Under the pieces are notes generated by a model. The model searched no databases. It had not been told where the DNA came from and was given only the letters and a program-made list of their open reading frames with translations. Of a stretch of DNA of 64,000 bases, positions 2,469 to 48,153 are shown piece after piece. The stretch lies in IMG/VR virus record IMGVR_UViG_3300031576_000002, positions 141,228 to 205,227 of that record. The stretch is one strand, 5' to 3'. Made by a program: the position numbers and the translations under genes. Position 1 is the first letter of the stretch; the number at the start of each line of letters is the position of its first letter.

Positions 2469-3176
2469 CTAAGTCGGGTTGGACTCGAAGGGAGCTTCTT
2501 CGGTCTCGGCTGCGTGAACAGCCTGCTGGAGCCTCTGAAGCAGGGTCGAGCCATTCGGCAACTTCTGGAGAACAGCTTCTACTTCTCGACGTAGATCCGA
2601 ATTCGGCTGGCGTAGCTCTGGATTGTGCAGGATCAACTGGATGGCGTCGGCCTGGTCCTTGACCCTCTTCGAGTCAAGCTTATAGCCCAGCAAGAGCCCC
2701 AGAGAGGGCACGAGAAGCTCCGTACCATGCACGGCCGTACGCGCGGACTCACCGCTCATCGCTGCATCGAGCTTGTCAGGATGGAACACCACTAGCTCGA
2801 TTACAACGCCTTCCTTGGCGTGCCGCAACTTCACGGGATCCAGGTTACCGCCCTCCCCCGTGACTCGGTCGAACCCGTACTTCTTGGAGAGCGCCATGAT
2901 TGGAGTGAGCGCGTTGTAGTCCACGGCAAAGTCAATATCCTTCGTCGCTCGCGTATAGTTGTAGACGTGCAGCGCATTGGATCCGATCAAGACGAACTCA
3001 ACTCCGGCAGCGTTCAAGAGTTTGACGGCATCCTTCATCGCTGCTGCGAAGTTGCCGCCCGCTCGGATATGGAGTCGTTGGAAAGACTCGCGGAGAAAGG
3101 TCGAGTTGAGCGCCATCACCTCATCGAGAGAGGCGGTGGGTGCCAAGCGATTCGCCAAGTTCTTGAGCCGTTCCAT
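2469..3176 (-). CDS. Nucleotidyltransferase (pol-beta superfamily, DUF6036/AbiEii-like)
   Basis: FVLIGSNALHVYNYTRATKDIDF = hhG[GS]xA...RxTxDhD signature; C-terminal K...RxKDxxD. Confidence 0.8.
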   Translation of the reverse strand: MERLKNLANRLAPTASLDEVMALNSTFLRESFQRLHIRAGGNFAAAMKDAVKLLNAAGVEFVLIGSNALHVYNYTRATKDIDFAVDYNALTPIMALSKKYGFDRVTGEGGNLDPVKLRHAKEGVVIELVVFHPDKLDAAMSGESARTAVHGTELLVPSLGLLLGYKLDSKRVKDQADAIQLILHNPELRQPNSDLRREVEAVLQKLPNGSTLLQRLQQAVHAAETEEAPFESNPT

Positions 3177-3218
3177 AGCGTGCAGTCTAGCAGAGCTTGC
3201 CCAAAAACGTCTCCGGCC

Positions 3219-3629
3219 TTACCGTTCCCGCACAGAGGTCAGGTCAACGATTTCGGCCTGTCCAAACCCCGCTCTCACCATCCACGGCTTTGGCCTTGTC
3301 CAAAGGCTGAACCGGATGATTACATCTGAAATGCGCTTGGCTGCCTTCTTAGAATCTGCCAGGATCCGCTGATCTACCACAATAACACCCAACTCATACT
3401 CCATTGCAAGAAACACGAAATCCCCTGCATTAGAAGTAATCACGATCTCCCCAGCAGCGACCGTCTTCGCGATCTGAGGATCCTTCATTCCCCCCGGTAC
3501 AGCCTTGACGGTGATGTTCACGGCCTGCAAGCTGTCCAGAATAGAAGAGACGTCTTCATCCAGGACCACACGGCCTAGGGCCATGCCGGCTCTATCAAGC
3601 ACCGCCTGAACTTTGCGAAGACGTTTCAT
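3219..3629 (-). CDS. PIN-like domain protein (DUF5615/VapC45-like)
   Basis: VVLDEDV...KDPQIA...IVITSNAGDF acidic motifs; start moved to ATG 3629 because the longer start lies within the structured RNA. Confidence 0.75.
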   Translation of the reverse strand: MKRLRKVQAVLDRAGMALGRVVLDEDVSSILDSLQAVNITVKAVPGGMKDPQIAKTVAAGEIVITSNAGDFVFLAMEYELGVIVVDQRILADSKKAAKRISDVIIRFSLWTRPKPWMVRAGFGQAEIVDLTSVRER

Positions 3630-3679
3630 CGCGATCTCAGAGATAGGCTTGGTGAGGTAGGCTAGAAGATAGTGCAAAG

Positions 3680-3800
3680 AGGGCGGCAGCATGCCACTTT
3701 CGTAGGCCCGGCTCCGCACCGGATCTACAGGAGTGTGTGGCTACATCCCGCTGCGCAGGCGCCAGGGCTTCCCAGTCCCCCGGGCACTTACTGCCGCCCT
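3680..3800 (-). ncRNA. Candidate 121-nt structured non-coding RNA (three-way junction, 5S-rRNA-like)
   Basis: 12-bp terminal stem AGGGCGGCAGUA/UGCUGCCGCCCU; arms CCCG/CGGG and GCCAC/GUGGC-UGUAG/CUACG-UCCGG/CCGGG; begins just after a TATAGT -10 box. Confidence 0.6.
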
Positions 3801-3803
3801 TCT

Positions 3804-3833
3804 ACTATACCCCTCAGAATCACGATTACGCGC
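3804..3833 (-). promoter_or_regulatory. Phage promoter GCGCGTAA-N16-TATAGT driving the ncRNA
   Basis: Matches the motif recurring across the window. Confidence 0.6.
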
Positions 3834-3951
3834 GGGCAGCCTCTACGGCCTCACCAGAAGCAACGATCTGCGTAGACTTGCGTCGAACCCTTTTTAGCGC
3901 CTCGACTTGAAGTTCGAGCGGCTGCCCGGCAGCATCGCAACCCTAACTTCT

Positions 3952-4575
3952 CTACGGCCCCAAAAGACGAATTGCTCTTCTGAGGTAGCCTGCTTGTACC
4001 GGCCCGTGCTCGCAATCATTCAGGCTCGGCCGCAAGCGGTGGTAGTAGTTCATGCGAATGGCCCAGTCCATCACACTCTTGACTCTGGACGGCTCAGGCG
4101 ACTCGCCAGGATCTCCCGTGCAGATGTAGCCTTGCAGATTGTCCTCGACGTCAAACACCTTGATTCCGTGCCCGCCCTCCCAGACAAGCCGGTGCCCGGT
4201 CTTCGGATCCTCGTCCTCGATGAGCGGCTCGACTTTGCCGTACTCACCCACGTTCGCGGGATCCGTTTCATCCCACCAGTGCGCGAGCAGATGCTTCAAC
4301 CGCGACTCTCGCCGGTGAGGCCGAATCCTTGAAGTCGTGTCCATGTAGCCAAGCCTCCGGTAGTCGAACCCTGGCAGAATAGCAATCTTCTGCTCCGGGA
4401 AATATCCACGCCTTTCCGTTACCGCGGACTGCCCCACGACCTCCGTAAACAGCGCTGGCAGCGCGGCAGGAGGAACCGTCGCAGCATGCCGGTTGTAGGC
4501 TGCGACTTCTCCACGCCCTGAGAAATCAAAGGATCCGGCTAGATGTGCAAGGATGTCATGCACGCCGTTTATCAT
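3952..4575 (-). CDS. C-terminal half of a split conserved phage protein (VHDxxxH...GExxAY...ALFTExxGQ)
   Basis: Continues the NLHFRG motif of 5067-5468; own ATG overlaps the HNH gene end. Confidence 0.75.
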   Translation of the reverse strand: MINGVHDILAHLAGSFDFSGRGEVAAYNRHAATVPPAALPALFTEVVGQSAVTERRGYFPEQKIAILPGFDYRRLGYMDTTSRIRPHRRESRLKHLLAHWWDETDPANVGEYGKVEPLIEDEDPKTGHRLVWEGGHGIKVFDVEDNLQGYICTGDPGESPEPSRVKSVMDWAIRMNYYHRLRPSLNDCEHGPVQAGYLRRAIRLLGP

Positions 4576-5089
4576 GAGGGCAGTAACCGTACAAACCGAG
4601 ACTCATATTGCAATTACAGCACAAAACCCGGTAACCCTCCGGATAGCCCTCTATTCTAAGCTCGTGAAATATCTCGCCCCTGTACCGAGATTTAGCTCTA
4701 TGCTGCCCACCCCCTCCACGGACGTGATCTAAGCACAAAAATTCGAGTAGCTCTTCCCCGCAGCATGCGCAGGCAGGGTGATCCAGCTTGCTGTAATGGC
4801 ATAGAGCTTCGTAGCGCTTGCTTCGCCGCCACTGCTTCAAATAAATTCGTCTCCTCTCCCGGAAAACAGGATCCTTTCCCCGTCGCCTGCTGTACTCTCG
4901 GAACTTCTCGGGACTAGCTTTGAAATACTCACGCGCCTGCCCCAAGACCTTCGCTCGAAACTCGGGCTCTTCGTGATACCGTTTGCGCTTGGCGGCAAGC
5001 ATGCACGCCTTGCACTTCCCGTAGGTACGGTAAAATTCTCTGCGTAGCTTAGCCGTCCCGCACCGATTACATATCTTTAGAGTGTCCAT
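4556..5089 (-). CDS. HNH (endonuclease VII-like) homing endonuclease
   Basis: N-terminal CxxC..CxxC; CACCG...LCLDHV...VLCCNCN...YGYCPH nuclease motif. Confidence 0.85.
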   Translation of the reverse strand: MDTLKICNRCGTAKLRREFYRTYGKCKACMLAAKRKRYHEEPEFRAKVLGQAREYFKASPEKFREYSRRRGKDPVFRERRRIYLKQWRRSKRYEALCHYSKLDHPACACCGEELLEFLCLDHVRGGGGQHRAKSRYRGEIFHELRIEGYPEGYRVLCCNCNMSLGLYGYCPHDKRRA

Positions 5090-5468
5090 GCACGTAGCAT
5101 AACATGAAAATACCCCGAAAGTGAAGGTTCTGATCTTGGGTAAAGAAAGGGTGCTCCGGACCTCCGGTGAATACCTTGAGCCGGTTGTTCTGCGTTACGT
5201 CCTCGACCATCTCCTCCGCATTGGCGTAAGGATTCTCGTCCACATACTCCACTTCAAACTTAGAAGTAATCCTGCGGAAAAGCTTGTCAAGATGAGCTAC
5301 GAGTGCTTGGTAGGACGGCACCGCAGACGCATCGTGAGCAGGCGCTTTCTCGTAAGCAGTAGCAACGGCTTCGAGGTATTCATCCCAGTCCACTGGCATC
5401 AACTTGGCCAAACGCTCAAGTAACTGCGCGTTTTTCTCTGGCGCAGGTGTATAGTAGTCAGCATGCAT
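5067..5468 (-). CDS. N-terminal half of the split protein (NPY...HP...NxxFRG)
   Basis: Conserved-looking part ends at FRG where the HNH insert begins; ATG lies inside the TIR of cassette 1. Confidence 0.75.
   Translation of the reverse strand: MHADYYTPAPEKNAQLLERLAKLMPVDWDEYLEAVATAYEKAPAHDASAVPSYQALVAHLDKLFRRITSKFEVEYVDENPYANAEEMVEDVTQNNRLKVFTGGPEHPFFTQDQNLHFRGIFMLCYVHGHSKDM
5426..5455 (+). promoter_or_regulatory. Phage promoter GCGCGTTT-N16-TATAGT, separated from the gene at 6712 by the cassette
   Basis: Motif match; TSD of cassette 1 overlaps the -10 box. Confidence 0.45.
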
Positions 5469-6687
5469 GACTGCTTAAGCCGCCACTTGCATAGCAGGTA
5501 AGCAGCCTTCTCGTTTCACAGAGGAACTTACAAGCGTATCCTCTCCACGAAGGGATAGCAGAGCCCGGTTTAAGACGTTTTTAGCCGCGTTGACATCTCT
5601 ATCAAGGACCAAGCCACAAGCAGAGCAGATATGGACTCTTTCACTCAAACTCTTCTTCACAGTCATTCCACATCCGCTGCACTCTTGGCTGGTGCCTCTG
5701 GGATTGACTTTTACCACTATCCTACCAGCTTCTTCCGCTTTGTAGGACAGCATGTGGAGCAACATCCCCATTCCAACATCTTTGAAGCTACGCCTGAATC
5801 CACGGCTGAGACCCTGGCTCATACCTTTCAGGTTCAAGTCTTCCACCGCAATCAGATCATACTCTTTGACCAAAGACTTAGACACTCCATCAAGAATATG
5901 CTTCCGAGTTCTTGTAACTTTCTGCCAAGCCTTAGCCAGTACCTTGACGGCTTTCCTTCTACGCTTAGATCCCTTCTGTCTCCTGGATACCGTTCTTTGA
6001 GCATGCTTGAGCTTCTTCTCGTTCTTGGCGTAAACACGTTGCCGCTCAATCAAGATGCCGTCTGAGGTAGCGACTAGAGCTTGCATGCCTAGATCAATGC
6101 CAATGACTTTGCCAGTCTTGAGAAGAGGAGCTGGAAGCGGTAGCTCACAGGATAAGACGGCGTACCAGCCGTCAGCTTCTCTTTTGACTGTGACCTCTTT
6201 AACCTTGGCATCAGGCGGAAGCTCCCGATAAGGATTCCAGCGGAAGTGTCCCAGCTTGGAAAGATGTAGCTTTTTGCTGTCAAACTTGAAACCTGACTGA
6301 TTGTATGTGAAGGAGTCGTACCGATCCCTACTCTTGAATCTGGGAAAGCCTGGCTTCTCTCCACGCTTGACTCTTCTGAAGAAAGCCTTGTACGTTTTGT
6401 CCAGTTTTTGAAGGACTGGGTGAAGAACTCTTGAATAGATCGTGTCATAGCCTTCTACCTGCTTTGAAACATACTTAAGCTCTAGGCACTGATCGTAGAA
6501 GCTGAGAGTTCTATTATGCTGCTTCCACTCCAGGATTCGTTGTTCCAAAGCACAGTTGTAGAGGAAGCGGCAGAAATCCAGAAGCCGCTGGAGATTGATC
6601 TCCTGGGCCTTGGTAGGTTGGAGGCGGAACTTGTAGGAACGGCGCACGGCTAGAGTGTATCACAAGGGAGTTAAGGAATCACGCATG
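5462..6687 (-). mobile_element. TIR-bounded tnpB cassette 1 (1226 bp, no transposase)
   Basis: Ends CATGCATGACTGCTTAA / rc CATGCGTGATTCCTTAA; flanking repeats TAGTAGTCAG (5452-5461) / TAGTAGTTAG (6688-6697). Confidence 0.85.
5475..6647 (-). CDS. tnpB: TnpB RNA-guided endonuclease, 390 aa
   Basis: YKFRLQPT...R.LYN.AL; RuvC GIDLG, AVEDL, DRDVNAAKN; Zn ribbon CSGCG/CSACG. Confidence 0.97.
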   Translation of the reverse strand: MRRSYKFRLQPTKAQEINLQRLLDFCRFLYNCALEQRILEWKQHNRTLSFYDQCLELKYVSKQVEGYDTIYSRVLHPVLQKLDKTYKAFFRRVKRGEKPGFPRFKSRDRYDSFTYNQSGFKFDSKKLHLSKLGHFRWNPYRELPPDAKVKEVTVKREADGWYAVLSCELPLPAPLLKTGKVIGIDLGMQALVATSDGILIERQRVYAKNEKKLKHAQRTVSRRQKGSKRRRKAVKVLAKAWQKVTRTRKHILDGVSKSLVKEYDLIAVEDLNLKGMSQGLSRGFRRSFKDVGMGMLLHMLSYKAEEAGRIVVKVNPRGTSQECSGCGMTVKKSLSERVHICSACGLVLDRDVNAAKNVLNRALLSLRGEDTLVSSSVKREGCLPAMQVAA

Positions 6688-6711
6688 TAGTAGTTAGTGA
6701 AGGGCTCGGCC

Positions 6712-7179
6712 ATGAGTCAACCAGTAAAAAAAATCTCACACCGCTTCACTTGGAGCGACATCATCCGGGAGTCGGCATGGGCACAGTGGATTCGTATGAC
6801 TCGGCCGCCAGGCTCGCGAATAACGCATACTCCGTGGGGGTGCATCCTCTCCGACATTCCTTCTGCCCAGCAGAAAATTGAAGCTCGAAAACTGCGCCGG
6901 GCTTACGAGTCTTGGATCGCCCAGGATGAAGAGCGTGCTCGTGACGCAGAGTTGTTCCGATTCTGGACCGCCGTGTTCCCTCCGCATCGCTTGCTCGTAG
7001 AGGTCACCGAAGCTTACGCGGCCGGCTTGCCGTACAAGAATATCCTCCGCGAGTACCGGCTACGGTTCAAAGTTCAGCCTCTCGGCTGGGCAAAGTGGGA
7101 AGCATTTGTTCGAGATCCGGAATCCGGCGGCGGAGTTCTCGTTCCATTCCGGGGTAGCCAAGAAGGAACGTCACGATAG
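6712..7179 (+). CDS. Hypothetical protein (rare plus-strand gene)
   Basis: Protein-like composition; fills a gap in minus-strand coding; downstream of a + strand promoter in the reconstructed empty site. Confidence 0.55.
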   Translation: MSQPVKKISHRFTWSDIIRESAWAQWIRMTRPPGSRITHTPWGCILSDIPSAQQKIEARKLRRAYESWIAQDEERARDAELFRFWTAVFPPHRLLVEVTEAYAAGLPYKNILREYRLRFKVQPLGWAKWEAFVRDPESGGGVLVPFRGSQEGTSR

Positions 7180-8272
7180 CGTCTGGACTCTGAAGTACCA
7201 CGTCTCTCCAAGAGAGCGGGTACTTGGAGTAGGTGAGCTTGATCCCCAGCTCTTCAAAGTTCAATCCAAGCGCTGGACCGAATTTACGAAACCGGGAAGG
7301 AAACTTTCCTATCTCCTCTTCAGGGATGTGCCCTTTGACGTCAAAAGCGAGCGATACGATCACTTCGCTATCCCTGAGACGGTACATGCCCACGGGTCCG
7401 CCAGAGGGCTTGAAAATGATGGATTCTTGATCGAACCAGTTTCCCAGCTCCACCGCATCACGCCACTCCACCCCTTCTACTAGAATCGACCGCTCCCGCT
7501 CAGCGTAGAATCCGTAGACTGGCGTCCAGGAGTACCCTCGACGTTCAAGCTCTGAAGTCAACTCTCCGTGGCGACGCCGGTTCTCGGCCCTCGACCTGTT
7601 TTCCTTTTCAGTGCGCTCCTCGATCTCCCGATCCCGCCAACGGATCCTCTCCGGTCGCGGAGAGGTCTGAAACTCCTTCTCTCGGTCACGCTGTCTCTCC
7701 CACTGTTCCGGTACCTTTGGATCGAACTTCACGGCTCTGGGGTCGGGGCGGTAAGCAGACAGAACCGTGTAGGCTGCGCCCGGCCGCTGAAGGTACTCCA
7801 GATCCGTCACGCTAATCCCCAGCAAAGCTATCGCCCGTCCGAGAATGCCGGCCTGCACCTTGGGCACGTTAGACCGCCATCCCGATCCGGGCGGCTTCTC
7901 GCGCGGATCTTTGCTGACAACCATCTCCTCCCAGAATTCCCTTACGCCAGGGCCTAGCAGTTGCCGCATCGGTCGCACGGCTTCCATGGGAACGGTTGGA
8001 TAGATGCCGTCCCCACCAAGCTGACCGCTGAGAAGATCAACTTCGACTCCACCCGGCAATAGATTCCAGTTGTGGACTTGCCCGTCTGGGAGACGGCCAT
8101 AGGCGATCTTGCCGCCTAGCTCTTGCTGCACGGCAAAGGCCACAGCAAGCGAATCCTTGGCCGTCGCTCCTTGGCTGTGAACGAGGCGCTGTACCTCTTG
8201 AAGTAGCGGCACAAAGTCGGCTGGAACTTCTCGCCCCTGCCCCAGCAGACTCAGAGCCCTGGCAAGAATCAT
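7067..8272 (-). CDS. Two-domain protein with C-terminal DUF3293-like domain
   Basis: VLSAYRP...ENRRRHGEL...L...GY...YGFY..ERSILV...AVELG..FDQESII. Confidence 0.65.
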   Translation of the reverse strand: MILARALSLLGQGREVPADFVPLLQEVQRLVHSQGATAKDSLAVAFAVQQELGGKIAYGRLPDGQVHNWNLLPGGVEVDLLSGQLGGDGIYPTVPMEAVRPMRQLLGPGVREFWEEMVVSKDPREKPPGSGWRSNVPKVQAGILGRAIALLGISVTDLEYLQRPGAAYTVLSAYRPDPRAVKFDPKVPEQWERQRDREKEFQTSPRPERIRWRDREIEERTEKENRSRAENRRRHGELTSELERRGYSWTPVYGFYAERERSILVEGVEWRDAVELGNWFDQESIIFKPSGGPVGMYRLRDSEVIVSLAFDVKGHIPEEEIGKFPSRFRKFGPALGLNFEELGIKLTYSKYPLSWRDVVLQSPDAIVTFLLGYPGMERELRRRIPDLEQMLPTLPSREAEL

Positions 8273-8294
8273 CACGTCTCCCGAAAAGCCACGC

Positions 8295-8675
8295 TCAAGG
8301 CACAGGTAGGTAAGCCTTGGCCGCACTGACCAGGAGTACGCCAAAGGTCTGGCCTACCTTGCCGAGCAGCGCGTTCAGCTTCTCGCGGTCGCAGTTGCCC
8401 CGCTGAAGCGTCGCCAGGTCCGCCTTGGAGATCTCGATCCTGGCCTCGGGAGTCAGATTCTTCATGAGCAGGTCACGGGCTTCCTGGCTCATCTTGGCGC
8501 CGCGAATGGCGTGAACGATGTCAAACCAGATGTCCTGCGCGAACGCCTTGAGAAGATCCCGGATCTCAGGATCTTCAAGCATGCCCCCGATCTCGTCTTT
8601 GATCGTGTCCCGAAACCCGAGATCGTTGAGCAGAACGCCGAGCGTGCCCTTGATGTTGTCAAGCGAGTTAGCCAT
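8295..8675 (-). CDS. Hypothetical helical protein
   Basis: SD GAGGT before ATG; overlaps upstream stop. Confidence 0.75.
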   Translation of the reverse strand: MANSLDNIKGTLGVLLNDLGFRDTIKDEIGGMLEDPEIRDLLKAFAQDIWFDIVHAIRGAKMSQEARDLLMKNLTPEARIEISKADLATLQRGNCDREKLNALLGKVGQTFGVLLVSAAKAYLPVP

Positions 8676-14372: not shown

Positions 14373-15955
14373 TTTCCCTCACGCTTGCGCGGGCTTGATG
14401 ACCATCACGGGTACACGACCGCCGCGCATCTTCAGGCATTCGTCTATCCGCTCTGCCACGTCTGCGAGCTTTTCCGCGTCCGCTTCTACTCTAGCCAGAG
14501 CTTTGGCATACTCTGCCCGCTCGAAATCTGGAAGATTGCGCAACACGATCGTCGCCGCGCTTCGGCCCAGATACACCATAGTAAGAGCCAGGTCGGATAG
14601 ATCCAGATGTCCCTCATCTATGCAGGTGTTGACAACTGCTTCAAGCCTACTCGTGGCGCGCTGCATGTCCTCCTGATAGACATCCTCTTCTGAATTCAAA
14701 ACGTCCTCCGATCCTCAAACTTGAAGCCTGCGGCTGCAAGGTGGGCGCTTACCTGCGCAATCGCGCGTGCTTGGTGAGCTGCGTACTCTACCGCGGTTCT
14801 GGGGATGTCCAGCTCCCGCTCTGAATTCTCGATCGCGTTCTCCAGGATCTTCCACGGCATCGACTCGACCAAGGCGAGGGTGTCTTCACTCACACGGCGG
14901 AAGATGAGTCCCGCGCTCGGATAGCCCCACATTTCTCCAATAGCGAGGAGGTTGACCTGGTTCTTCGTCCAGGCTACATGGACAGGGTTGAGAGCTTCAG
15001 TCGGCATTTTTGACGGCCTCCCTGACGCTGTCCAGCGTCCGCTCGATATCGCTCAGACGATCTACGATCGGCTGGACGGCTTCGTTCACATCAGAAGGCT
15101 GAGCCGTACTTCCTATCTCGCCAGAGATGTCTTCAAGCCTTTCCAAAATCTTGTCGTAGTCACCCTCGACGCTGCGGATCCGGTCGCGCAGGTAGCTGAA
15201 CTCCACCGCCATCCAGCGACGAAGTTGTTCGAGCGTCAGCTCTTCCGAATCGGCCGGCTGCACCGACGGCTGCAACGGCGACAGAACTGTAGGCTGGAGC
15301 TTTTCTGCTTTTTTCATCGAGCCCTCAGTGCGCCATACACGGCGCTGATTTTGGATGCTTAGAAGAATCGTAACGCAGGCGCAAAGTCCGGTAGAGCACG
15401 GACAAGTCCGCGTCTTCTGCGCCTCCTACTAGAATACCGTTCTTGTACACGTCGGCGCGGAATACTCGATCTGCGCCATCCCACCAGACCTCGGCCCAGA
15501 ATGCTGCCGCTGCTACGGGAGCCCAGACCGCTTGTGCCCGGAGTTGCTCTGCGGTACCAGCTTCTACTTCCAGGCCGGCGATGTCGGTCATGGTCAACGC
15601 ACTCTCGGATAGCTGAGGAGGGCGCATGTAGTTGTGCCAGCACAACTAGGTAGGCTTAGCCTTTCTACTTTCTAACTGCTCCAGATCTTTATGCGCCGCT
15701 CTCAAGGCAACAACAGAGTCCTTCAGGAAGTCGGAGATCACTTCTCGCTCCACCTGAGTCGTCGCTGTATCGAACTCTTGCCTGAGAAACTCCAACGCCT
15801 TCGTGTGCCGGTGGATCTGTCCAAGAATGCGTGCTCGTGCCTGGCGTATCTCAGATACTTTTCGCTTCTTCTTGGGCTCTTTCTTGGGCGGAAGTACCCG
15901 CGTGGACCCGAAGTCATTCATGAAGTCTTCGGCGGCTGGAAACTATCACCTTTAT

Positions 15956-17167
15956 GCGACAGAAGAGGCCGCTCTGTGCTACAGTATCGGCTATGATTCA
16001 GCTCACCCTCCGACTCAAGCTCAGGCCAACTCCTGAGCAGAAGTCTATCTTCTATACCACCTCGGAGCAGCATACTCAATCTTACAACTACGCCTGCAAC
16101 TTTGGCTGGAAGAACAGCACTGCCAACCGGATCGAGATTCATCATGGTGTCTACCGTGCCCAAAGAGAGGCGACTCAGCTTCCTTCTCAACTTGTCGTAT
16201 CCAGCATTACCAGGGCTTCTGAATCTCTAGCCTCTGCCAAAGCCTTGAGAAGGAAAAAGAAGAAAGTAGCCTGTCCAAAGTCCAAACTCTGCCCCATCCG
16301 ATACGATTCAAGATCCTCCACAGTCAATCTCAAAGAAGGCTTTGCCGCTCTAGCAACCGTATCCGGCAGACAAAGAGTCCAGTTCAAAGTCCCTGACTTT
16401 CAACTTCCATACATTGACTGGAAAGTCTGCTCTTCCGATCTTATCCGGAATAGGAAGGGTAACTACTTCCTTCATGTCGTAGTCAGCCGTGAAGAGGAAC
16501 CGTTCATACCCGTTAAGAGAACAGTCGGAGTCGATCTTGGTATCACGCATCCAGCCGTAACTTCCAAGAACAAGTTTTTGGGTAAGAGGAGCTGGAAGAA
16601 CGTAGAAAGGAGAAACTTCAAACTGAGGCGTTCCCTTCAAGCCAAAGGCACAAAATCTGCCAAGAGACATCTTCAAAAGCTCTCTGGTAGACAGAAACGT
16701 TTCCGGCGTGACTGTGACCGTGTCTTGAGTAAGCAGTTGGTCCAGTCTTGTAAGAAGGGTTCTACCTTGGTATTTGAAAACTTGAAAGAGATCCGATCCG
16801 GTAACTCCAAAGGCAAGAGGTTCAACCGGAAGCTCCACGGTTGGAGCTTTGACCAACTTCAAGCCTTTGTAGAGTACAAAGCAAAGATGAGAGGTATCCA
16901 AGTTGTTTACGTGGATCCCCGGTACACCTCTCAGAAATGCTCCAAGTGTAAGTTCAGGAGCAAGAAAAACCGGATCTCTCAAAGTAGCTTCCAGTGTCGA
17001 AGCTGCGGGTTCAGGATTCATGCTGATCTCAATGCAGCTAGAAACATACGGAAGCGGTATCTTTTTACTCAGGCTAAAAGTTTGGGTAACGGGCTTATGT
17101 CAACAAGCCTAGTGCAGAGGTCAAAAGATCATCTGCAAGCTGCCTGCTTCGGCCGGTAGTAGTTGAT
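15956..17167 (+). mobile_element. IS200/IS605-family (IS1341-type, tnpB-only) insertion
   Basis: Inserted after TTTAT (15951-15955); right end hairpin ...GCTGCCTGCTTCGGCCGGTAGTAGTTGAT; removal restores stop codon (CFLA-TAA) of the interrupted minus-strand gene; ends uncertain by a few bp. Confidence 0.75.
15993..17159 (+). CDS. tnpB: TnpB RNA-guided endonuclease (distinct lineage)
   Basis: VGVDLG, LVFENL, YTSQKCSKC, CRSCG, HADLNAARN; leaderless after TGTGCTACAGT. Confidence 0.95.
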   Translation: MIQLTLRLKLRPTPEQKSIFYTTSEQHTQSYNYACNFGWKNSTANRIEIHHGVYRAQREATQLPSQLVVSSITRASESLASAKALRRKKKKVACPKSKLCPIRYDSRSSTVNLKEGFAALATVSGRQRVQFKVPDFQLPYIDWKVCSSDLIRNRKGNYFLHVVVSREEEPFIPVKRTVGVDLGITHPAVTSKNKFLGKRSWKNVERRNFKLRRSLQAKGTKSAKRHLQKLSGRQKRFRRDCDRVLSKQLVQSCKKGSTLVFENLKEIRSGNSKGKRFNRKLHGWSFDQLQAFVEYKAKMRGIQVVYVDPRYTSQKCSKCKFRSKKNRISQSSFQCRSCGFRIHADLNAARNIRKRYLFTQAKSLGNGLMSTSLVQRSKDHLQAACFGR

Positions 17168-18769: not shown

Positions 18770-18820
18770 CGGACGTACTATACAGCGCGCTTCCAAAAAT
18801 ACGCACCTATCCCGTCGAGC

Positions 18821-20046
18821 CATGCGTGACTCCTTAAGCCCTCTGTGCTACCATCCAGCCATGCGGCGTTCCTACAAGTTCCGGCTTCAACCGACCAAGG
18901 CTCAGGAGATCAATCTCCAGAGGCTCCTGGACTACTGCCGCTTTCTCTACAACTGCGCTTTGGAGCAGCGTATTACAGAATACAAACAGCATAAGAGGAC
19001 TCTCAGCTACTACGATCAAGCCTTAGAACTTAAGCACGTATCCAAGCAGGTAGAAGGCTACGACACAGTCTACGCCAAAGTCTTGCAGGTTGTCCTTCAA
19101 AAACTGGATCTAGCTTACAAGGCTTTCTTCAGAAGGATCAAGCGTGGAGAGAAGCCGGGCTTTCCACGGTTCAAGAGTAGGGATCGGTACGACTCCTTTA
19201 CCTACAACCAGTCTGGTTTCAAGTTTGACAGTCAAAGGCTGCATCTTTCCAAGCTGGGCCATTTCCGCTGGAATCCTTATCGACAACTTCCACCAGACGA
19301 TAAGGTCAAAGAGGTCACAGTCAAAAGAGAAGCCGACGGTTGGTACGCAGTCTTATCCTGTGAGCTACCCCTTCCAGAACCTCTTCCCGCGACTGGAAAG
19401 GTCGTTGGTATTGATCTAGGCATGCAAGCTCTAGTTGCTACCTCAGATGGAATCGTAATTGAACGCCAACGTGTCTACGCCAAGAATGAGAAGAAGCTCA
19501 AGCATGCTCAGAGAACGGTTTCCAGAAGAAAGAAAGGCTCTAACCGTAGAAGAAAAGCAGTCAAGGTATTGGCTAAGGCTTGGCAGAAAGCTACAAGAAC
19601 TCGGAAGCATATTCTTGATGGAGTGTCTAAGCAGTTGGTACAGAACTATGATCTGATTGCGGTTGAAGACCTGAACCTGAAAGGGATGAGTCAAGGGCTC
19701 AACCGTGGATTCAGGCGTAGCTTCAAGGATGTCGGAATGGGGATGTTGCTTCACATGCTGTCCTACAAAGCGGAAGAAGCTGGTAGGATAGTGGTGAAAG
19801 TAGATCCCAGAGGAACCAGCCAGGAATGTAGTGGATGCGGAGCAACTGTGAAGAAGAGTTTGAAAGAAAGAGTTCATAACTGCTCTGCTTGTGGCTTGGT
19901 CCTTGATAGAGATGTCAACGCGGCTAAAAACGTCTTAAGCAGGGCTCTGCTATCCCTTCGTGGAGAGGATACGCTTGTAAGTTCCTCTGTGAAGCGAGAA
20001 GATTTCTTAAGTGCTGCTCAGGCAGCGGCTTAAGCAATCACGCATG
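18821..20046 (+). mobile_element. TIR-bounded tnpB cassette 2 (1226 bp, no transposase)
   Basis: CATGCGTGACTCCTTAAGCC ... GGCTTAAGCAATCACGCATG (18/20 IR); flanking CCCGTCGAGC (18811-18820) / CCCGTCGAAT (20047-20056). Confidence 0.88.
18861..20033 (+). CDS. tnpB: TnpB RNA-guided endonuclease, 390 aa, paralog of 5475-6647
   Basis: About 41 differences in 390 aa by manual count; RuvC D/E/D intact; real start ATG 18861. Confidence 0.97.
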   Translation: MRRSYKFRLQPTKAQEINLQRLLDYCRFLYNCALEQRITEYKQHKRTLSYYDQALELKHVSKQVEGYDTVYAKVLQVVLQKLDLAYKAFFRRIKRGEKPGFPRFKSRDRYDSFTYNQSGFKFDSQRLHLSKLGHFRWNPYRQLPPDDKVKEVTVKREADGWYAVLSCELPLPEPLPATGKVVGIDLGMQALVATSDGIVIERQRVYAKNEKKLKHAQRTVSRRKKGSNRRRKAVKVLAKAWQKATRTRKHILDGVSKQLVQNYDLIAVEDLNLKGMSQGLNRGFRRSFKDVGMGMLLHMLSYKAEEAGRIVVKVDPRGTSQECSGCGATVKKSLKERVHNCSACGLVLDRDVNAAKNVLSRALLSLRGEDTLVSSSVKREDFLSAAQAAA

Positions 20047-20375
20047 CCCGTCGAATCGCCGCCTGCCCAGGGACTTCGCCAGTGGGGGAGGGGTAGGAGG
20101 TCATCCGACCGCAGCTCGATCGACATCTCTAGGGCTTGGTACTCGTAGCACTCCAAGCCCGCCAGCCACCAGCCAGAGGCAATCAGCTCCTCTTCCGAGG
20201 CGTCGGTAGGATCCTGCATGCAAACGTCGAATACGATCTGCGGCTCGTCAGCCATACCGCAGGTCGTCCGCTGAAGGGCCAGGATGGCGCAGAAGAAACC
20301 GGCCGGCGCCTTGGCCTCCGCCAACATCGGAATCCGCAAGGTGTGCGCAAGTAGGAGTAAGGCTAAGGCACGCAT
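20007..20375 (-). CDS. Secreted/membrane hypothetical protein; 3' end interrupted by cassette 2
   Basis: Hydrophobic N-terminus; empty site gives ...GGDSTG-TAG. Confidence 0.55.
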   Translation of the reverse strand: MRALALLLLAHTLRIPMLAEAKAPAGFFCAILALQRTTCGMADEPQIVFDVCMQDPTDASEEELIASGWWLAGLECYEYQALEMSIELRSDDLLPLPHWRSPWAGGDSTGMRDCLSRCLSST

Positions 20376-37977: not shown

Positions 37978-38524
37978 TTAGACATCGGTCTTTAGCTCCA
38001 GTGGCCGTGCGCCAATGCGCTCAACCCGCGTGATGGCCGCCACGTCCCAGATGCAACCCGAGGCGCAATCCCAGCCGTAGTACCACAGCATTCCAGGGTG
38101 CAGCCGCAGACCCCACTGGTACGGCGCGATTTCGATCCCGGCATACCGCTCGGCTACCGCGTGCCAGTCCGGCGGATCCGAATAATACGGCCGGGCCTGG
38201 GGAACAAACTCGTGGTGGAATGCGAGCAAACTCCTCCTCGCTGCGGATCACCAAGATCCGGTCCAGCGCGACCTCGAAGCGGTACCAGTGGGGGCGGAGG
38301 CCAGAGAGGAAACTCTCGGCCTGGCACCACTCTATCCATGAGTTACCGACGCCGTACCAGACACCTGGCGGCTTTCCATTTGGCCGCGCCTTGAACTCCG
38401 CGAGAGACTGGAGCACCAGCGCGTCCTCATCGGAGCTATGGATCCTGTCGTCTGGCCCCACGGCTTCCGGCACCATGCAGAAGCGGTTCTCTCCCTGCGC
38501 GGAAGGACACGCGACGTAGGCCAC
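37978..38524 (-). pseudogene. Frameshifted conserved viral protein (KPxGxW...W..WC / DW..VA..Y.GIEI...WYYGWDCASGCIW)
   Basis: One extra T at GAG-TTTG-CTC (~38228) separates two halves of one family pattern. Confidence 0.65.
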
Positions 38525-40187
38525 AGGGTTAACCTCCGGCTGCATCAACGTCCTCACACACGGTCGAGTTCCCCTCGGTGCAGCACTCGGAAGCCCAAGT
38601 AGTTCCATCCACACGCTCCCCTGAGTAGATAATACACCGCGCAGGATCAGATTCTACGCCGCAGCCAAGCAGGAGCACTACCACCGCCCAGCAAATAACA
38701 TCAATCACATTCATACCACATCTCCCCTCGGCGCCGCTCGACAAGAACTCCACCTTCGTCGAACAGTCCGAGATCAAGATTCGTCGTGCGGCATAGGTGA
38801 CGGTATGCCAACCACGCCTGTTTGAGATCATCTGCAAGAACAAGATCGACGGGGAACTCGGCCAGCGGAGAGTTCCAAGCGATACGGATGGGATAAATCA
38901 AACTGTTTACCGGGTAGTGCCCCTTGGGCCTGATAGCGAACATCACTTCCTCGGCAGTACCAGCTTACGGATTTTGGGGCGTATCTGCTGACGTATCTTC
39001 CAAAGATCAAAGGATCCTTGCGCGTTTAGCCACACATCAGGCGACGTGCGGAAGGCTACCCCCAGCCGAGATGGTCGCGGATCTTGGCCTGCATCTGGGC
39101 GAGGTCGCGTTCAGTTGGAACGCTATCCTCAGAACTCTTGGCCGGTTCTACTCCATGTGCCCCGTACTTCTCCTTCCAGCACTCCAAGCAGAGCCCGTCG
39201 AATTCAACGTGGAACCGCTCATACTCTCCGGAAGAAAAACCACAGGCATGGCAGGTAACCCGGCGGGCACGAGGCTGACTACTGGAGGACTCTTTCAAAT
39301 CGCTCATGGCTCCCTCGGATACAACCGTGCTAACTCTTTCACTGCCCACCGAATTCGACCTACATCGTACAAAGTCAGAGGCTCTCCGGTTAACGCCAGG
39401 CCCGTCGTATACGTTTTGTACGGAGCGATCAGAGTCACCAACTGCTTCAGTTCTTCCGGCACTCCAGCGGCCTCAATCGCTTCAGCAATAGACATAGACG
39501 GATGCTCACGGCTAACCCAATTTGTACCCGCAAGAAGTAGTTTTTCGTGCCTAGTCATGGCTTCCTCGACAGAGTTGACCGATGCGCTGCTTCAATCCCT
39601 CGCGCAGCATCCCCTTGATTGTCTCGATCGCAGTATCCGGATTCGCCAGTACCTCGCGCGTCCATGTCTTCGTGGCTTCTCGCTCCGCTCGCAAGCTCGC
39701 CACCTTGGCCCCGTGGTAGGCGGGATCAAGGCAAAGATAGATCGGATGCAGGTTCATCTCTTGGAGCATGGGCTTGCAGAGATTCAGCAACGCTTGTACG
39801 AATCGCTCTTCGCGTGCCCCGACATTACAATACAATTCAAATACGTCGATTCGGCAGCCGGGTGGATCCTCAATCCTGCGGTACCCTACGAGCACCTCTT
39901 CATCAAGTAGCAGGCGAACGGCATTCCGCACGATCTCAAGTCCAGCTTCGATGGCGGGTGATTTATTCATGGGCCGATCCTATCTGTGCGACCGTGGCGA
40001 CGTGCTGGACCGTACACCTGTTCCCAGCACACGCGCTTTGAGTTTCCGCTAGCCCGGCAATGGTCGTAGGCATCACGCGACGGGTTCACGACTTTGGGCG
40101 CCAACACACACAGCACGAGTAGAACGAAGAGCGCCGCTACCAGGAGCGCACACGCTTTGAACTGTTCTCGTGCGCGTGTATCCATAT

Positions 40188-46430: not shown

Positions 46431-46627
46431 TACCCGCCTTCCAGCTCGCGCTCCTCGGCCAGCCATCCGGGAATCGTAACTGACTCTCCGTCGCGGTCTA
46501 CGATCTGGGAGAGTGGAATCCAGACCTGACGGCCGTCCTGCTCAACTAGCAGGGCTCGATCCGTCTCGCGAACGATTCGTACTTCGCAGCGCACGCTGGC
46601 GTCATCTTCAAATCCATTGAATCTCAT
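46430..46627 (-). CDS. Small conserved phage beta-protein
   Basis: ETDRALLV...VWIPLSQI...IPGWLA. Confidence 0.75.
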   Translation of the reverse strand: MRFNGFEDDASVRCEVRIVRETDRALLVEQDGRQVWIPLSQIVDRDGESVTIPGWLAEERELEGG

Positions 46628-48153
46628 TTGGGCACCTCCTTGTGGAGCATGTCTGCGGCTCTTACGCGCTTCTTGGCAATCTTGGCGTAGCTCTCATCCT
46701 GCTCGATGCCATAGTACCGGAAGCCTTCCAAGAGAGCTGCTACTCCAATCGAACCTGAACCTGCGAACGGATCGAGAACTTTACCGTTGGGCGGGGTAAT
46801 GAGGCGGCAAAGGTAACGGCAGAGCTTGATGCTCTTCACAGTCGGATGCCCGTTGACTTCTCCCGGGTCGAGCCCAAAGTTGCGATCCTTCTTGGAAGAC
46901 TTACTGCAATAGAAAAATCTCGATACTGTTGCTCCGGGGAAATCCAGTTGGCGCACCGCGCAAGAAGGAACGCAGGCAAATAGCGGAATAGCCTCATTAC
47001 CGCCTTCACCTGCGAAGGTCGTATCTGGCCCAGTCATTCGCTTGAGTTCACCAAAAATAATATCCTGCGATTCCCCTTTACTATTTTTTCGCACGGCCGT
47101 ACCAGTCTTCACTTTCATAGTTCCGACTTCCCGGCACAGAGGGTCGTGAGAAAGAACCAAATTTGCCGGCCACCTGCCCTTCGTAGAAAGCCGTTCTCCT
47201 ACAGGCTTAGCCTCTTCATACGAAGAGCCATGCCACGGCTTCCCTTTGCCCTTGCCTGACTTGAACCAGGACTCTGGGTACTCCGCTTTCCAGTCTGCTC
47301 GTACACGACAACCGTCGATGTTAAGACCGCCAACGCCGTGCTTGAGAACATTGGCAGCAATCGTGGGTTCGGAGATTGGCTTCTGGACCAGAATCCAGAA
47401 CTCTGCGGCAGGCTTTAACGCAGTTCCGTAACCCGCCCAAGGCTCTGCCTCTTCTGTACCAATAGATCGAATCTCTTCTTCACGGCTCTGAGACTTGGAA
47501 CCGGGACGTTTTGCAAAATCTTGACCGCCTGAACGTGCGTGCCGGATCTTTCCTACTACGTCTCCGAGTTTTGGGTAGACTTTTTCTGCCCAGGCAGGAA
47601 CTGCATCAAACTCCGCACAGATCCGCGCAAACCTTTCCGCAGTTGGAATTTGGGGGCATGGCGTATTCTCCCCAAGCCAGTGGTCTACTTGGCGAGGAGT
47701 GACGCCAGACGCTTTCGCTACTTCTTCCCGAGAGCCGAGGCCCTTCAACCAAGAAACTATTTCTTCCGCATCTACCCTACGCTTATCGATCTGTTTGGCG
47801 ATAGTAGAACTTTTCGGAAATCCGACTCCAAATAAATGTGTAACTATATCTTTCACTTGGAATCCTGACCATTCGATCGCCGTCATCGTCCAGTGCGACG
47901 TTCTCGGAATCGCCCAGACAAGCGCGTAGCCTCCAGGCTTCAAAACACGGTGGCACTCCCGTAGAATCTCGGTCAGCCAGCCAATCCACTGCTTTCGACC
48001 GCCTTTCGCAGAGTCCCACTTTGCGGGCAGGAACGAAATTCCTGCCGGCGGATCTGTGACGACGGAGTGGAAACGGTTATCGGGTAAACGCCGCAGAACT
48101 TCCAAGGCGTCTCCGTGAACTACCCGGTATCGACGTTTCGGTTTCTCAGCCAT
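46624..48153 (-). CDS. DNA amino-methyltransferase (N4C/N6A, beta class) with inserted HTH
   Basis: GDALEVL..TDPPAG; GFPKS; GTALKPA; GRWPAN; RFFYC; HPTVK; VLDPFAGSGS. Confidence 0.92.
   Translation of the reverse strand: MAEKPKRRYRVVHGDALEVLRRLPDNRFHSVVTDPPAGISFLPAKWDSAKGGRKQWIGWLTEILRECHRVLKPGGYALVWAIPRTSHWTMTAIEWSGFQVKDIVTHLFGVGFPKSSTIAKQIDKRRVDAEEIVSWLKGLGSREEVAKASGVTPRQVDHWLGENTPCPQIPTAERFARICAEFDAVPAWAEKVYPKLGDVVGKIRHARSGGQDFAKRPGSKSQSREEEIRSIGTEEAEPWAGYGTALKPAAEFWILVQKPISEPTIAANVLKHGVGGLNIDGCRVRADWKAEYPESWFKSGKGKGKPWHGSSYEEAKPVGERLSTKGRWPANLVLSHDPLCREVGTMKVKTGTAVRKNSKGESQDIIFGELKRMTGPDTTFAGEGGNEAIPLFACVPSCAVRQLDFPGATVSRFFYCSKSSKKDRNFGLDPGEVNGHPTVKSIKLCRYLCRLITPPNGKVLDPFAGSGSIGVAALLEGFRYYGIEQDESYAKIAKKRVRAADMLHKEVPK

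What the first reader, a model, noticed from the sequence alone, without database searches (positions are those of the whole stretch)
3952..5468. Intron-less HNH endonuclease splits a gene exactly within its FRG|VHD motif
Seen: deleting 4565-5112 (548 bp) gives TTT CGG GGC GTG CAT GAC = NLHFRGVHDILAH. The insert is an 18-nt AT-rich piece containing an extended -10 (TGTTATGCT) plus the HNH ORF. An 8-bp direct repeat CGTGCATG (5087-5094, 4557-4564) overlaps the HNH ATG and TGA and is in the same codon phase (V-H) in both halves. There is no room for a group I/II ribozyme and it is not an intein. The 3' half has its own ATG (4575). Established: free-standing homing endonucleases can split genes into two complementing polypeptides (Aeh1 nrdA/mobE). 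Inference: a split protein, or rejoining by bypassing, recombination or unusual splicing at the repeat.
Basis: partly seen in the sequence, partly recalled or inferred. Interest (0 to 1): 0.75.

Follow-up and report, generated by a model that had tools for sequence, protein, structure and literature searches.

The report
HNH endonuclease gene splits phage gene
A selfish free-standing HNH endonuclease gene has landed in the most conserved motif of an uncharacterised phage gene and cut it into two intact reading frames, a rare but already described "genes-in-pieces" arrangement.

Summary
On the minus strand of a 205-kb cave-metagenome phage record, a 548-bp insert (5112..4565) splits one gene into an N-piece (5468..5067) and a C-piece (4575..3952). 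The insert is an 18-nt leader plus a 177-codon HNH gene. The pieces align end to end with several hundred uninterrupted homologues, at R-G|V-H-D. In a confident model of the closest intact homologue, this point lies mid-helix, among four invariant residues. No ribozyme, intein, split intein or unusual RNA fold is present, and the three frames differ. Both pieces keep every invariant residue and diverge in the proportion normal for the family.

New findings:
- The junction repeat extends to an imperfect 21-mer, with a third copy inside the HNH gene.
- The same gene is also interrupted after codon 9 by a TnpB transposon, whose right end supplies the present ATG through a derived C-to-T change.
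- Two HNH paralogues elsewhere sit beside a scar of their target gene.

Most likely the gene is expressed as two polypeptides, like Aeh1 nrdA-a/mobE/nrdA-b. Function of the pieces is inferred, not shown. This is a new member of a known kind, of moderate interest.

The parts
6688..6713 (-). Orphaned original 5' end of the host gene. It reads ATG GCC GAG CCC TTC ACT AAC TAC TA (MAEPFTNYY). The TnpB element cut it off. Its last 10 nt (6697..6688, CTAACTACTA) are the left copy of the target-site duplication.
   Evidence: Removing the element and one duplication copy puts this ATG in frame with the N-piece. This is an inference from the sequence.
5462..6687 (-). TnpB-only insertion sequence of 1226 bp. 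It has imperfect 18-bp terminal inverted repeats (CATGCGTGAyTCCTTAAG ... CTTAAGCrrTCAyGCATG) and carries tnpB at 6647..5475. Its right end contains the present start codon of the N-piece.
   Evidence: TnpB identity: Pfam OrfB_IS605 and Cas12f1-like_TNB, NCBIfam guided_TnpB at 2.6e-90. Boundaries come from aligning the 3 copies in the genome.
5452..5461 (-). Right copy of the target-site duplication (CTGACTACTA). It now encodes residues 3-6 of the N-piece.
5067..5468 (-). N-piece of the host gene, 133 codons. Residues 14-119 are homologous to the family. The last 14 residues (IFMLCYVHGHSKDM) and the stop codon are read from the insert.
   Evidence: It is 48% identical to P0053 residues 9-112, and the invariant Y, Y, N, R and near-invariant P, P, H are all kept.
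4565..5112 (-). The 548-bp insert: an 18-nt leader (5112..5095), 5 nt (CGTGC), and the HNH ORF up to the junction with host sequence.
   Evidence: It is absent from all other homologues seen.
4556..5089 (-). Free-standing HNH endonuclease gene of 177 codons. It has an N-terminal CxxC...CxxC zinc ribbon, a helical basic region and a C-terminal HNH core. Its last three codons (CGT GCA TGA) are read from host-gene sequence.
   Evidence: PHROG 1035 and 2255 at about 2e-7. 35% identity over 97% of its length to Streptomyces phage Galactica gp103, annotated 'HNH endonuclease'. All invariant columns of A3 are kept. In the AF2 model (pLDDT 85) the weak best structural matches are HNH domains.
5087..5107 (-). 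Junction repeat copy A, TCATGTTATGCTACGTGCATG. It ends with the HNH ATG. In the N-piece frame it reads M-L-C-Y-V-H.
   Evidence: the repeat finder D5; exact 8-mer.
4557..4577 (-). Junction repeat copy B, TCATGATAAACGGCGTGCATG. It starts with the C-piece ATG and ends in the HNH TGA. In the C-piece frame it reads M-I-N-G-V-H.
   Evidence: the repeat finder D5, 16 of 21 identical to copy A, spacing 530.
5000..5009 (-). Third copy, GGCGTGCATG, inside the HNH ORF at codons A-C-M of the zinc ribbon. Ten nt are identical to the C-junction copy.
   Evidence: Its meaning is unexplained.
3952..4575 (-). C-piece of the host gene, 207 codons. M-I-N come from the insert. Residues 5-83 are homologous to the family (VHD...H...GE...ALFTEVVGQ...QK...D...G). 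Residues 84-207 or so are a lineage-specific extension of unknown nature. The ORF overlaps the HNH ORF by 20 nt.
   Evidence: It is 72% identical to P0053 residues 113-191 and keeps all 14 invariant or near-invariant residues. The extension has no informative match.

Best explanation
A free-standing HNH homing-endonuclease gene of the mob/seg type, carried neither in an intron nor in an intein, inserted into the most conserved stretch of an uncharacterised phage gene. The insertion point lies between the Gly and Val codons of R-G|V-H-D.

The insert brings a stop codon 14 codons past the break, which ends the N-piece. It also brings an ATG three codons before the break. That ATG is formed by the CAT codon of the endonuclease's invariant C-terminal His plus the next G, and it starts the C-piece. 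The C-piece ORF overlaps the end of the HNH ORF by 20 nt, so translational coupling is possible.

The host gene is therefore expressed as two polypeptides. If the protein is still active, they must reassemble without a covalent bond around a helix broken in the middle of a putative metal-binding H-D-x3-H motif. [quoted passage not shown]

Shown here: the insertion, the collinearity of the pieces, the absence of splicing machinery, and the intactness of all three ORFs. Inferred: that both pieces are made and assemble, and that the endonuclease targets the uninterrupted allele.
For: **Collinear pieces.** phrog_3170 profile 114-207 matches the N-piece and 201-272 the C-piece. Alignments A1 and the pairwise check agree.

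**Homologues are uninterrupted.** The N-piece finds 649 representative homologues. Every genomic locus inspected is continuous.

**The HNH gene looks functional and free-standing.** PHROG HMM hits are at about 2e-7. An annotated HNH homologue covers 97% of it. All invariant HNH positions are kept. Its relatives P0201, P0202 and P0206 sit between genes in phage contigs.

**No splicing apparatus.**
- No Rfam intron at E up to 10.
- Insert RNA fold z = +0.54.
- Frame offsets are +1 and +1, and 548 mod 3 = 2 (coordinates).
- The tails are only 14 and 3 residues long.

**Neither piece is decaying.** All 21 invariant or near-invariant family positions are kept. Identity to the nearest relative P0053 is 48% for the N-piece and 72% for the C-piece. 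That ratio, 1.50, matches the family mean of 1.46 +/- 0.27, and both pieces are closer to P0053 than any other member is.

**Expression appears to have been rescued at the second interruption.** The right end of the TnpB element reads TCATGCATG in this copy, while the other five termini read TCACGCATG. The derived T creates an in-frame ATG six nt after the tnpB stop.

**Precedent.** In Aeh1, mobE splits nrdA, overlaps nrdA-b, and leaves insertion-derived tails that are essential for assembly (Crona et al. 2011, PMC3045599; Friedrich et al. 2007, cited).
Against: - There is no expression or protein evidence. No RNA run was listed, and only DNA contigs of one sample hold the locus.
- No close relative (over 75% identity) exists in any collection searched. 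Presence/absence polymorphism and the age of the insertion are therefore unknown, and a very recent insertion would also leave both pieces intact.
- The break lies mid-helix, at A112|V113 of helix 104-121 in the P0053 model. This is a harsher place than the inter-strand loop split in Aeh1 NrdA.
- No Shine-Dalgarno sequence precedes the C-piece ATG, although many genes of this phage lack one.
- The gene has been hit by two mobile elements, which is also what a dispensable gene would show.
Confidence: 0.55

Rival explanations
1. The same insertion event happened, but the host gene is simply inactivated. The two ORFs are still open only because the insertion or insertions are recent, and the pieces are non-functional remnants of a dispensable gene.
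For: Two independent mobile elements sit in one gene. The break is in the middle of the helix that carries the invariant R, H, D and H. The family has no known function and is absent from many phages, so it may be dispensable. No relative is close enough to date the event.
Against: Both downstream pieces have in-frame ATGs placed within a few codons of the breaks, and one of them was made by a derived point change in the IS end. No stop, frameshift or loss of a conserved residue occurs in 340 codons. Divergence of the two halves is proportionate. The three IS copies differ by about 10% at the protein level, which suggests some age if they diverged in place, though that is uncertain.
Confidence: 0.3
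2. The gene is rejoined at the DNA level. Recombination or replication slippage between the two 21-nt junction repeats (8 nt of them exact) deletes 530 bp in part of the population. This restores one in-frame ORF that reads FRG-IFM(L/I)(C/N)(Y/G)-VHD.
For: The repeats are direct, share one codon phase, and flank the HNH ORF exactly. A 530-bp deletion is in frame (coordinates).
Against: The product would carry six extra residues inside the invariant helix, which no homologue has (A2). No contig with such a joint exists in the only sample, although contigs drop rare variants. Eight bp of identity is a poor recombination substrate.
Confidence: 0.05
3. The pieces are rejoined during expression by one of three routes: ribosomal bypass from the first repeat to the second, two +1 frameshifts that make an N-HNH-C fusion, or an unknown RNA splicing reaction.
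For: There is only the phase-matched repeat, plus the fact that N to HNH and HNH to C are both +1 shifts at C-ATG contexts.
Against: The gap of 530-548 nt is about ten times larger than any known bypass (T4 gene 60 skips 50 nt; from my own knowledge). No stop follows a take-off codon. There is no ribozyme and no unusual structure. The intervening ORF is an intact, conserved endonuclease that is translated in its own frame.
Confidence: 0.03
4. The insert is a degenerate group I or II intron, or an intein or split intein, that carries an HNH gene.
For: HNH genes are common cargo of phage group I introns and of some inteins (established knowledge). 'Fractured genes' with a homing endonuclease gene between split-intein halves are known (Dassa et al. 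2009, PMC2677866).
Against: Only 23 nt of the insert lie outside the HNH ORF. There is no Rfam hit. Fold z is +0.54. The insert is not in frame with its flanks. The tails of 14 and 3 residues are far too short for split-intein halves and lack the Cys/Ser and His-Asn boundary residues.
Confidence: 0.01

Closest known systems
Aeromonas phage Aeh1 nrdA-a / mobE / nrdA-b 'genes in pieces' (Friedrich et al. 2007 PNAS; Crona et al. 2011 NAR, PMC3045599)
   Same: - A free-standing HNH-family endonuclease gene is inserted in a conserved, active-site-coding part of a phage gene.
- There is no intron or intein.
- New stop and start codons and short terminal tails come from the insertion.
- The endonuclease ORF overlaps the downstream piece.
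- Conserved residues are shared out between the two polypeptides.
   Different: - The host gene is an uncharacterised family (phrog_3170), not ribonucleotide reductase.
- The break is mid-helix rather than between two strands.
- The tails are shorter (14 and 3 residues).
- The HNH protein is not a close MobE relative. Relatedness was not tested beyond the shared PHROG and HNH motifs.
- The same gene also carries a TnpB element.
- Function of the pieces is untested here.
T4 topoisomerase subunit genes 39 and 60 separated by mobA, and seg/mob 'intronless homing' (Edgell et al. 2010 review, PMC2988022, listed; details are from my own knowledge)
   Same: A free-standing endonuclease gene sits between two pieces of what is one gene in related phages, and the pieces work as separate subunits.
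   Different: T4 gene 60 also needs a 50-nt translational bypass, and nothing comparable is seen here. The T4 split lies between domains.
Fractured genes: split inteins flanking a free-standing homing endonuclease gene (Dassa et al. 2009, PMC2677866)
   Same: The gene halves are separated by an endonuclease ORF in environmental phage-like DNA.
   Different: Those halves end and begin with split-intein modules that ligate the protein. Here there are no intein modules.
Intron-encoded HNH endonucleases of phages (I-HmuI, I-TevIII; Bastillevirinae introns, PMC11878797, listed)
   Same: An HNH gene interrupts a conserved coding site.
   Different: There is no ribozyme around the ORF, so the mRNA cannot be spliced.

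Membership tests
Free-standing HNH homing endonuclease gene (mob-like) | Intact HNH (beta-beta-alpha-metal) nuclease motif | tested here: met
   PHROG 1035 and 2255 hits at E about 2e-7. All invariant columns of A3 are kept: CxCCGE, FLxxDH, GG, LCxNCN, G-CPH. A homologue annotated HNH covers 97% of the protein. Pfam and NCBIfam do not recognise it. Structural matches to HNH domains are consistent but weak, Z up to 3.6.
Free-standing HNH homing endonuclease gene (mob-like) | Not embedded in a self-splicing intron or an intein | tested here: met
   No Rfam match. Fold z +0.54. Only 23 non-ORF nt lie in the insert. Its frame differs from both flanks.
Free-standing HNH homing endonuclease gene (mob-like) | Present in some and absent from other closely related genomes at the same site (homing polymorphism) | tested here: inconclusive
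   All homologues found lack the insert, but the nearest is only 48-72% identical. No HNH-minus allele appears in the sample's contigs.
Free-standing HNH homing endonuclease gene (mob-like) | The enzyme cleaves the uninterrupted allele near the insertion site | not testable with these tools
   This needs an in vitro cleavage assay.
Genes-in-pieces (Aeh1 nrdA type) | Two ORFs that are collinear and non-overlapping with one uninterrupted family | tested here: met
Genes-in-pieces (Aeh1 nrdA type) | Stop and start codons and terminal tails created by the insertion, with the endonuclease ORF overlapping the downstream piece | tested here: met
   The N-piece has a tail of 14 residues plus TAA. The C-piece has an M-I-N head. 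The overlap is 20 nt.
Genes-in-pieces (Aeh1 nrdA type) | Both pieces kept under constraint | tested here: inconclusive
   All conserved residues are kept and divergence is proportionate. Without close relatives, time since insertion cannot be separated from constraint.
Genes-in-pieces (Aeh1 nrdA type) | The pieces assemble into an active protein | not testable with these tools
   This needs co-expression, pull-down and an activity assay. The family has no known activity.
Group I / group II intron | Ribozyme core flanking or surrounding the ORF | tested here: not met
   and the insert anatomy.
Intein / split intein | In-frame insertion with N- and C-terminal splicing blocks, or N-intein and C-intein modules on the two pieces | tested here: not met
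   548 nt is not a multiple of 3. The three ORFs use three frames. The tails are 14 and 3 residues without the boundary residues.
Programmed translational bypass (T4 gene 60 type) | Matched take-off and landing codons some tens of nt apart, a stop after the take-off codon, and a take-off hairpin | tested here: not met
   The gap is 530-548 nt and holds a conserved ORF. No stop follows GGT or CAT. There is no special structure.

The most novel reading that the evidence does not exclude
The imperfect 21-nt direct repeats bracket the HNH ORF, share one codon phase, and have a third copy inside the ORF. On the most novel reading they are a functional part of the element rather than a scar. They could be operator-like mimics of the target site through which the endonuclease regulates itself, as I-TevI does. 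They could instead be the substrate for a rejoining event, by DNA deletion or a very long ribosomal or RNA bypass, that makes a single-chain protein with six extra residues.
Probability: 0.05. Interest if true: 0.8.

Novelty: new member of a known kind. Interest (0 to 1): 0.4.

Why it matters
Characterised cases in which a free-standing homing endonuclease cuts a gene in two and the pieces still work are very few; Aeh1 nrdA is the reference case. This locus offers a second, cleaner natural test. The break lies inside an alpha-helix and next to the invariant H-D-x3-H residues of a widespread family of unknown function. That family occurs in T4-like cyanophages, cluster C mycobacteriophages, Bastillevirinae, and many large multidomain proteins. 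The insertion marks the most conserved site of the family, which is likely its active site.

If the pieces do complement, the case would show how far fragment complementation can neutralise selfish-element damage. The same gene also carries a TnpB transposon whose end has mutated to supply a start codon, which makes this a compact example of a host gene adapting to two different parasites. For annotation, it warns that the three ORFs should be read as one interrupted gene plus a mobile nuclease.

Tried and rejected
**Close relatives with or without the insert.**
- Scans of viral contigs with the HNH protein, P0053 and the C-piece returned only distant, uninterrupted loci. A scan with alignment A1 failed for lack of a conserved block.
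- The phage collection has no DNA match.

**Other split members of the family.** None is an endonuclease insertion.
- P0101 is cut by a contig end. P0136 is not on record.
- P0209 and P0210 are pieces separated by only 124 nt on one short scaffold, too little for an inserted gene. P0214 is followed immediately by the downstream piece in a 2x-coverage contig, so it looks like a frameshift.
- The two places in Bacillus phage P59 are its terminal repeats.

**Function of the host family.**
- Pfam, NCBIfam and PDB sequence searches gave nothing.
- The AF2 model is confident (pLDDT 86) but has no solved-structure match: Foldseek E above 0.7 and VIA Z below 3. AFDB clusters hold only uncharacterised proteins.
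- Weak leads were not substantiated: Coq4-like at ESM Atlas score 0.64, and minimal zinc peptidases and YbeY at Z 2.2-2.8.

**Other checks.**
- Read evidence: there is one sample, held as DNA contigs only, and no RNA run was listed.
- A chimeric origin of the two halves was rejected, because the ratio of identity to P0053 is the family norm.
- A link between the IS terminal repeat (CATGCGTGA) and the junction 8-mer (CGTGCATGA) was considered. The motifs differ, so I treat this as coincidence.
- dN/dS was not computed. The nearest relative is too distant and synonymous sites are saturated.
Full report
**Context.** The window is bases 141228-205227 of a single 205,227-bp IMG/VR virus record. The record is linear and about 85% complete. 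The only runs that hold the locus come from one cave metagenome sample. G+C is 56%. The finding lies on the minus strand, in a run of genes that all point the same way.

**Observation.** Reading 5700..3700 on the minus strand and listing ORFs confirms every coordinate.
- The N-piece, 5468..5067 (133 aa), ends ...NLHFRG-IFMLCYVHGHSKDM-stop.
- The HNH ORF, 5089..4556 (177 aa), starts 23 nt before that stop, in the +1 frame.
- The C-piece, 4575..3952 (207 aa), starts M-I-N-G-VHDILAH... It begins 20 nt before the HNH stop, again in the +1 frame.

Removing 5112..4565 (548 bp, two more than a multiple of three) joins TTT CGG GG to C GTG CAT GAC. The 8-mer CGTGCATG sits at 5094..5087 and 4564..4557.

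**One gene in two pieces.**
- PHROG family 3170 (function unknown) matches the N-piece over profile positions 114-207 and the C-piece over 201-272.
- The C-piece finds 50 homologues and the N-piece finds 649 cluster representatives. Typical members are single proteins of about 205-230 residues that read NL(K/Q)(L/F)R(A/G)VHDxxxH without interruption (A1; A2).
- The closest, P0053 (233 aa), is encoded as one ORF on three metagenome contigs.
- Other uninterrupted loci are in a viral contig, about 200 cluster C mycobacteriophages such as Rizal gp102, and Bacillus phage P59.
- The window's break falls between P0053 A112 and V113.

**Where the break lies in the fold.** An AlphaFold2 model of P0053 built on 45 homologues is confident: mean pLDDT 86, and above 93 through residues 21-180. 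The break is in the middle of helix 104-121. That helix carries four of the ten invariant residues of the family (R111, H114, D115, H119). The N-piece keeps R. The C-piece keeps H, D, H and the downstream invariant G-E and E.

The fold has no significant solved relative, and no Pfam, NCBIfam or PDB sequence match. Function is therefore unknown. The H-D-x3-H...E pattern suggests a metal site, but that is an inference. Weak Coq4-like and mini-zincin leads were not substantiated.

**The insert.** The HNH ORF matches PHROG endonuclease VII and HNH families at about 2e-7. It is 35% identical over 97% of its length to an annotated HNH endonuclease of Streptomyces phage Galactica. It keeps every invariant position of its small family, including CxCCGE, FLxxDH, LCxNCN and G-CPH (A3). 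Its AF2 model (pLDDT 85) gives only weak structural matches, but these are almost all HNH domains aligned on residues 85-177.

Its relatives sit free-standing between genes in phage contigs. Two paralogues (31-39% identity) lie in tandem elsewhere in this genome.

Nothing else fits in the insert, because only 23 nt precede the ATG.
- Rfam finds no intron at E up to 10.
- The insert RNA folds no better than shuffled sequence, z = +0.54.
- The frames exclude an intein.
- The 14- and 3-residue tails exclude split inteins.

**State of the pieces.** All 21 invariant or near-invariant positions of A2 are kept. Identity to P0053 is 48% for the N-piece and 72% for the C-piece. That looked asymmetric, but the same ratio (1.50) is the family norm, at 1.46 +/- 0.27 over 44 members. 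Both pieces are closer to P0053 than any other member is. The two pieces therefore share one history, and neither shows extra divergence.

- The 8-mer is the exact core of an imperfect 21-nt direct repeat, 16 of 21 identical: 5107..5087 TCATGTTATGCTACGTGCATG and 4577..4557 TCATGATAAACGGCGTGCATG. By my binomial estimate, 8 matches in the 13 extension positions has a chance probability of about 0.006.
- Both copies are in the same codon phase in the host pieces (M-L-C-Y-V-H and M-I-N-G-V-H).
- Copy A ends in the HNH start codon. Copy B begins with the C-piece start codon and ends in the HNH stop codon.
- A third copy, GGCGTGCATG, lies inside the HNH zinc-ribbon codons at 5009..5000. The 8-mer occurs only 11 times in the whole genome.
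- The C-piece ATG is made from the CAT codon of the invariant His of the HNH C-P-H motif plus the next G. The last three HNH codons are read from host sequence.

I cannot say how the repeat arose. A scar of insertion, a remnant of an earlier occupant, and a target-mimic operator all remain open.

**A second interruption of the same gene.** The tnpB ORF directly upstream (6647..5475) is one of three copies about 90% identical in protein sequence in this genome. Aligning the copies with their flanks and listing the termini defines a 1226-bp element, 6687..5462. It has imperfect 18-bp terminal inverted repeats and is flanked in each copy by an 8-10-bp direct duplication.

In the window copy, the right end contains the ATG at 5468. 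Removing the element and one duplication copy places an upstream ATG (6713..6711) in frame: MAEPFTNYY-TPAPEKNAQ.... So the transposon sits after codon 9 of the original gene.

Five of the six termini read TCACGCATG, and only this right end reads TCATGCATG. That derived T creates the in-frame ATG, six nt after the tnpB stop and in the same frame as tnpB. This reading is an inference from three copies. It fits selection to keep the downstream gene translated, and it is the best indirect argument that the gene still matters.

**A parallel case in the same genome.** The two HNH paralogues (G000 102,953-104,098) sit between a 46-codon stub and a complete AdoMetDC-like gene. The stub matches the gene's first 41 codons at only 23 of 41 residues and 67 of 123 nt. 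It is therefore the scar of a replaced, diverged allele. This shows that this HNH family moves together with flanking target sequence in this phage lineage, as homing endonuclease genes do.

**Mechanism and rivals.** The best-supported reading is a genes-in-pieces arrangement like Aeh1 nrdA-a/mobE/nrdA-b. There too the endonuclease gene overlaps the downstream piece, active-site residues are divided between the pieces, and insertion-derived tails are essential for assembly (PMC3045599).

I put the insertion itself, with no intron or intein, at about 0.9, and continued function as two polypeptides at about 0.55. The main rival (0.3) is that the gene is simply dead and too recently hit to show decay. 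The mid-helix break and the two insertions favour this rival. The two well-placed start codons and the clean ORFs count against it.

Rejoining by deletion between the repeats (0.05) would add six residues inside the invariant helix and is not seen in the sample's contigs. Bypass, double frameshift or unknown splicing (0.03) has no support beyond the repeat. No RNA data exist.

**Verdict.** This is a real, well-delimited and correctly interpreted feature. It is a new example of a known but rarely documented phenomenon, in a gene family of unknown function, with some instructive extra detail. Interest is moderate.

Noticed in passing
window 5462-6687 (-), window about 18820-20050 (+), and G000:C1 about 2734-3959 (-): There are three copies, about 90% identical in protein, of a TnpB-only element. 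It has imperfect 18-bp terminal inverted repeats (CATGCGTGAyTCCTTAAG) and 8-10-bp flanking direct duplications. By my own knowledge this is unlike classical IS200/IS605 or IS607 elements, which have neither. Two more distant tnpB genes lie at window 15954-17159 and at G000 38020-38589. The sample's contigs hold further variants at higher depth.
   Followed up: partly
window 5466-5470: The right end of the window's IS copy reads TCATGCATG, while the other five termini read TCACGCATG. The derived T makes the in-frame ATG now used by the host gene's N-piece. It lies six nt after the tnpB stop and in the same frame as tnpB.
   Followed up: yes
L003 2247..374 (-), which is G000:C1 about 102423-104296: Two tandem HNH paralogues sit between a 46-codon stub and a full AdoMetDC-like gene. 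The stub is a strongly diverged duplicate of that gene's first 41 codons (23 of 41 aa, 67 of 123 nt). It is the scar of allele replacement next to the endonuclease genes.
   Followed up: partly
window 5000-5009 (-): A third copy of the junction motif (GGCGTGCATG) lies inside the HNH ORF. An 8-nt complement (GTGCAAGG / CCTTGCAC) links its upstream flank to the C-piece just after the junction. The meaning is unknown and it may be chance.
   Followed up: partly
window 6712-7179 (+) and 6711-6713 (-): A 155-codon plus-strand ORF with protein-like composition starts at an ATG that overlaps, within one CATG, the inferred original ATG of the host gene on the other strand. It also overlaps the 3' end of the 425-codon minus-strand gene by 113 nt. 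It has no homologue in the phage collection, so whether it is a real gene is unclear.
   Followed up: partly
window 7067-8344 (-): A 425-aa protein matches DUF3293, the S-adenosylmethionine lyase family (28.0 bits, exactly at the cut-off) and YunG. It may be a SAM-degrading anti-restriction function, in a genome that also encodes an AdoMetDC-like protein.
   Followed up: no
window 46624-48153 (-): An N6/N4 DNA methyltransferase of 509 aa has its two Pfam-matched parts about 270 residues apart. The insert between them has weak helix-turn-helix matches.
   Followed up: no
window 3955-4326 (-): The C-piece carries a C-terminal extension of about 120 residues that most family members lack. It has no informative sequence or structure match. 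Other members carry unrelated extensions or sit inside proteins of 500-2400 residues with GNAT or HEAT domains.
   Followed up: partly
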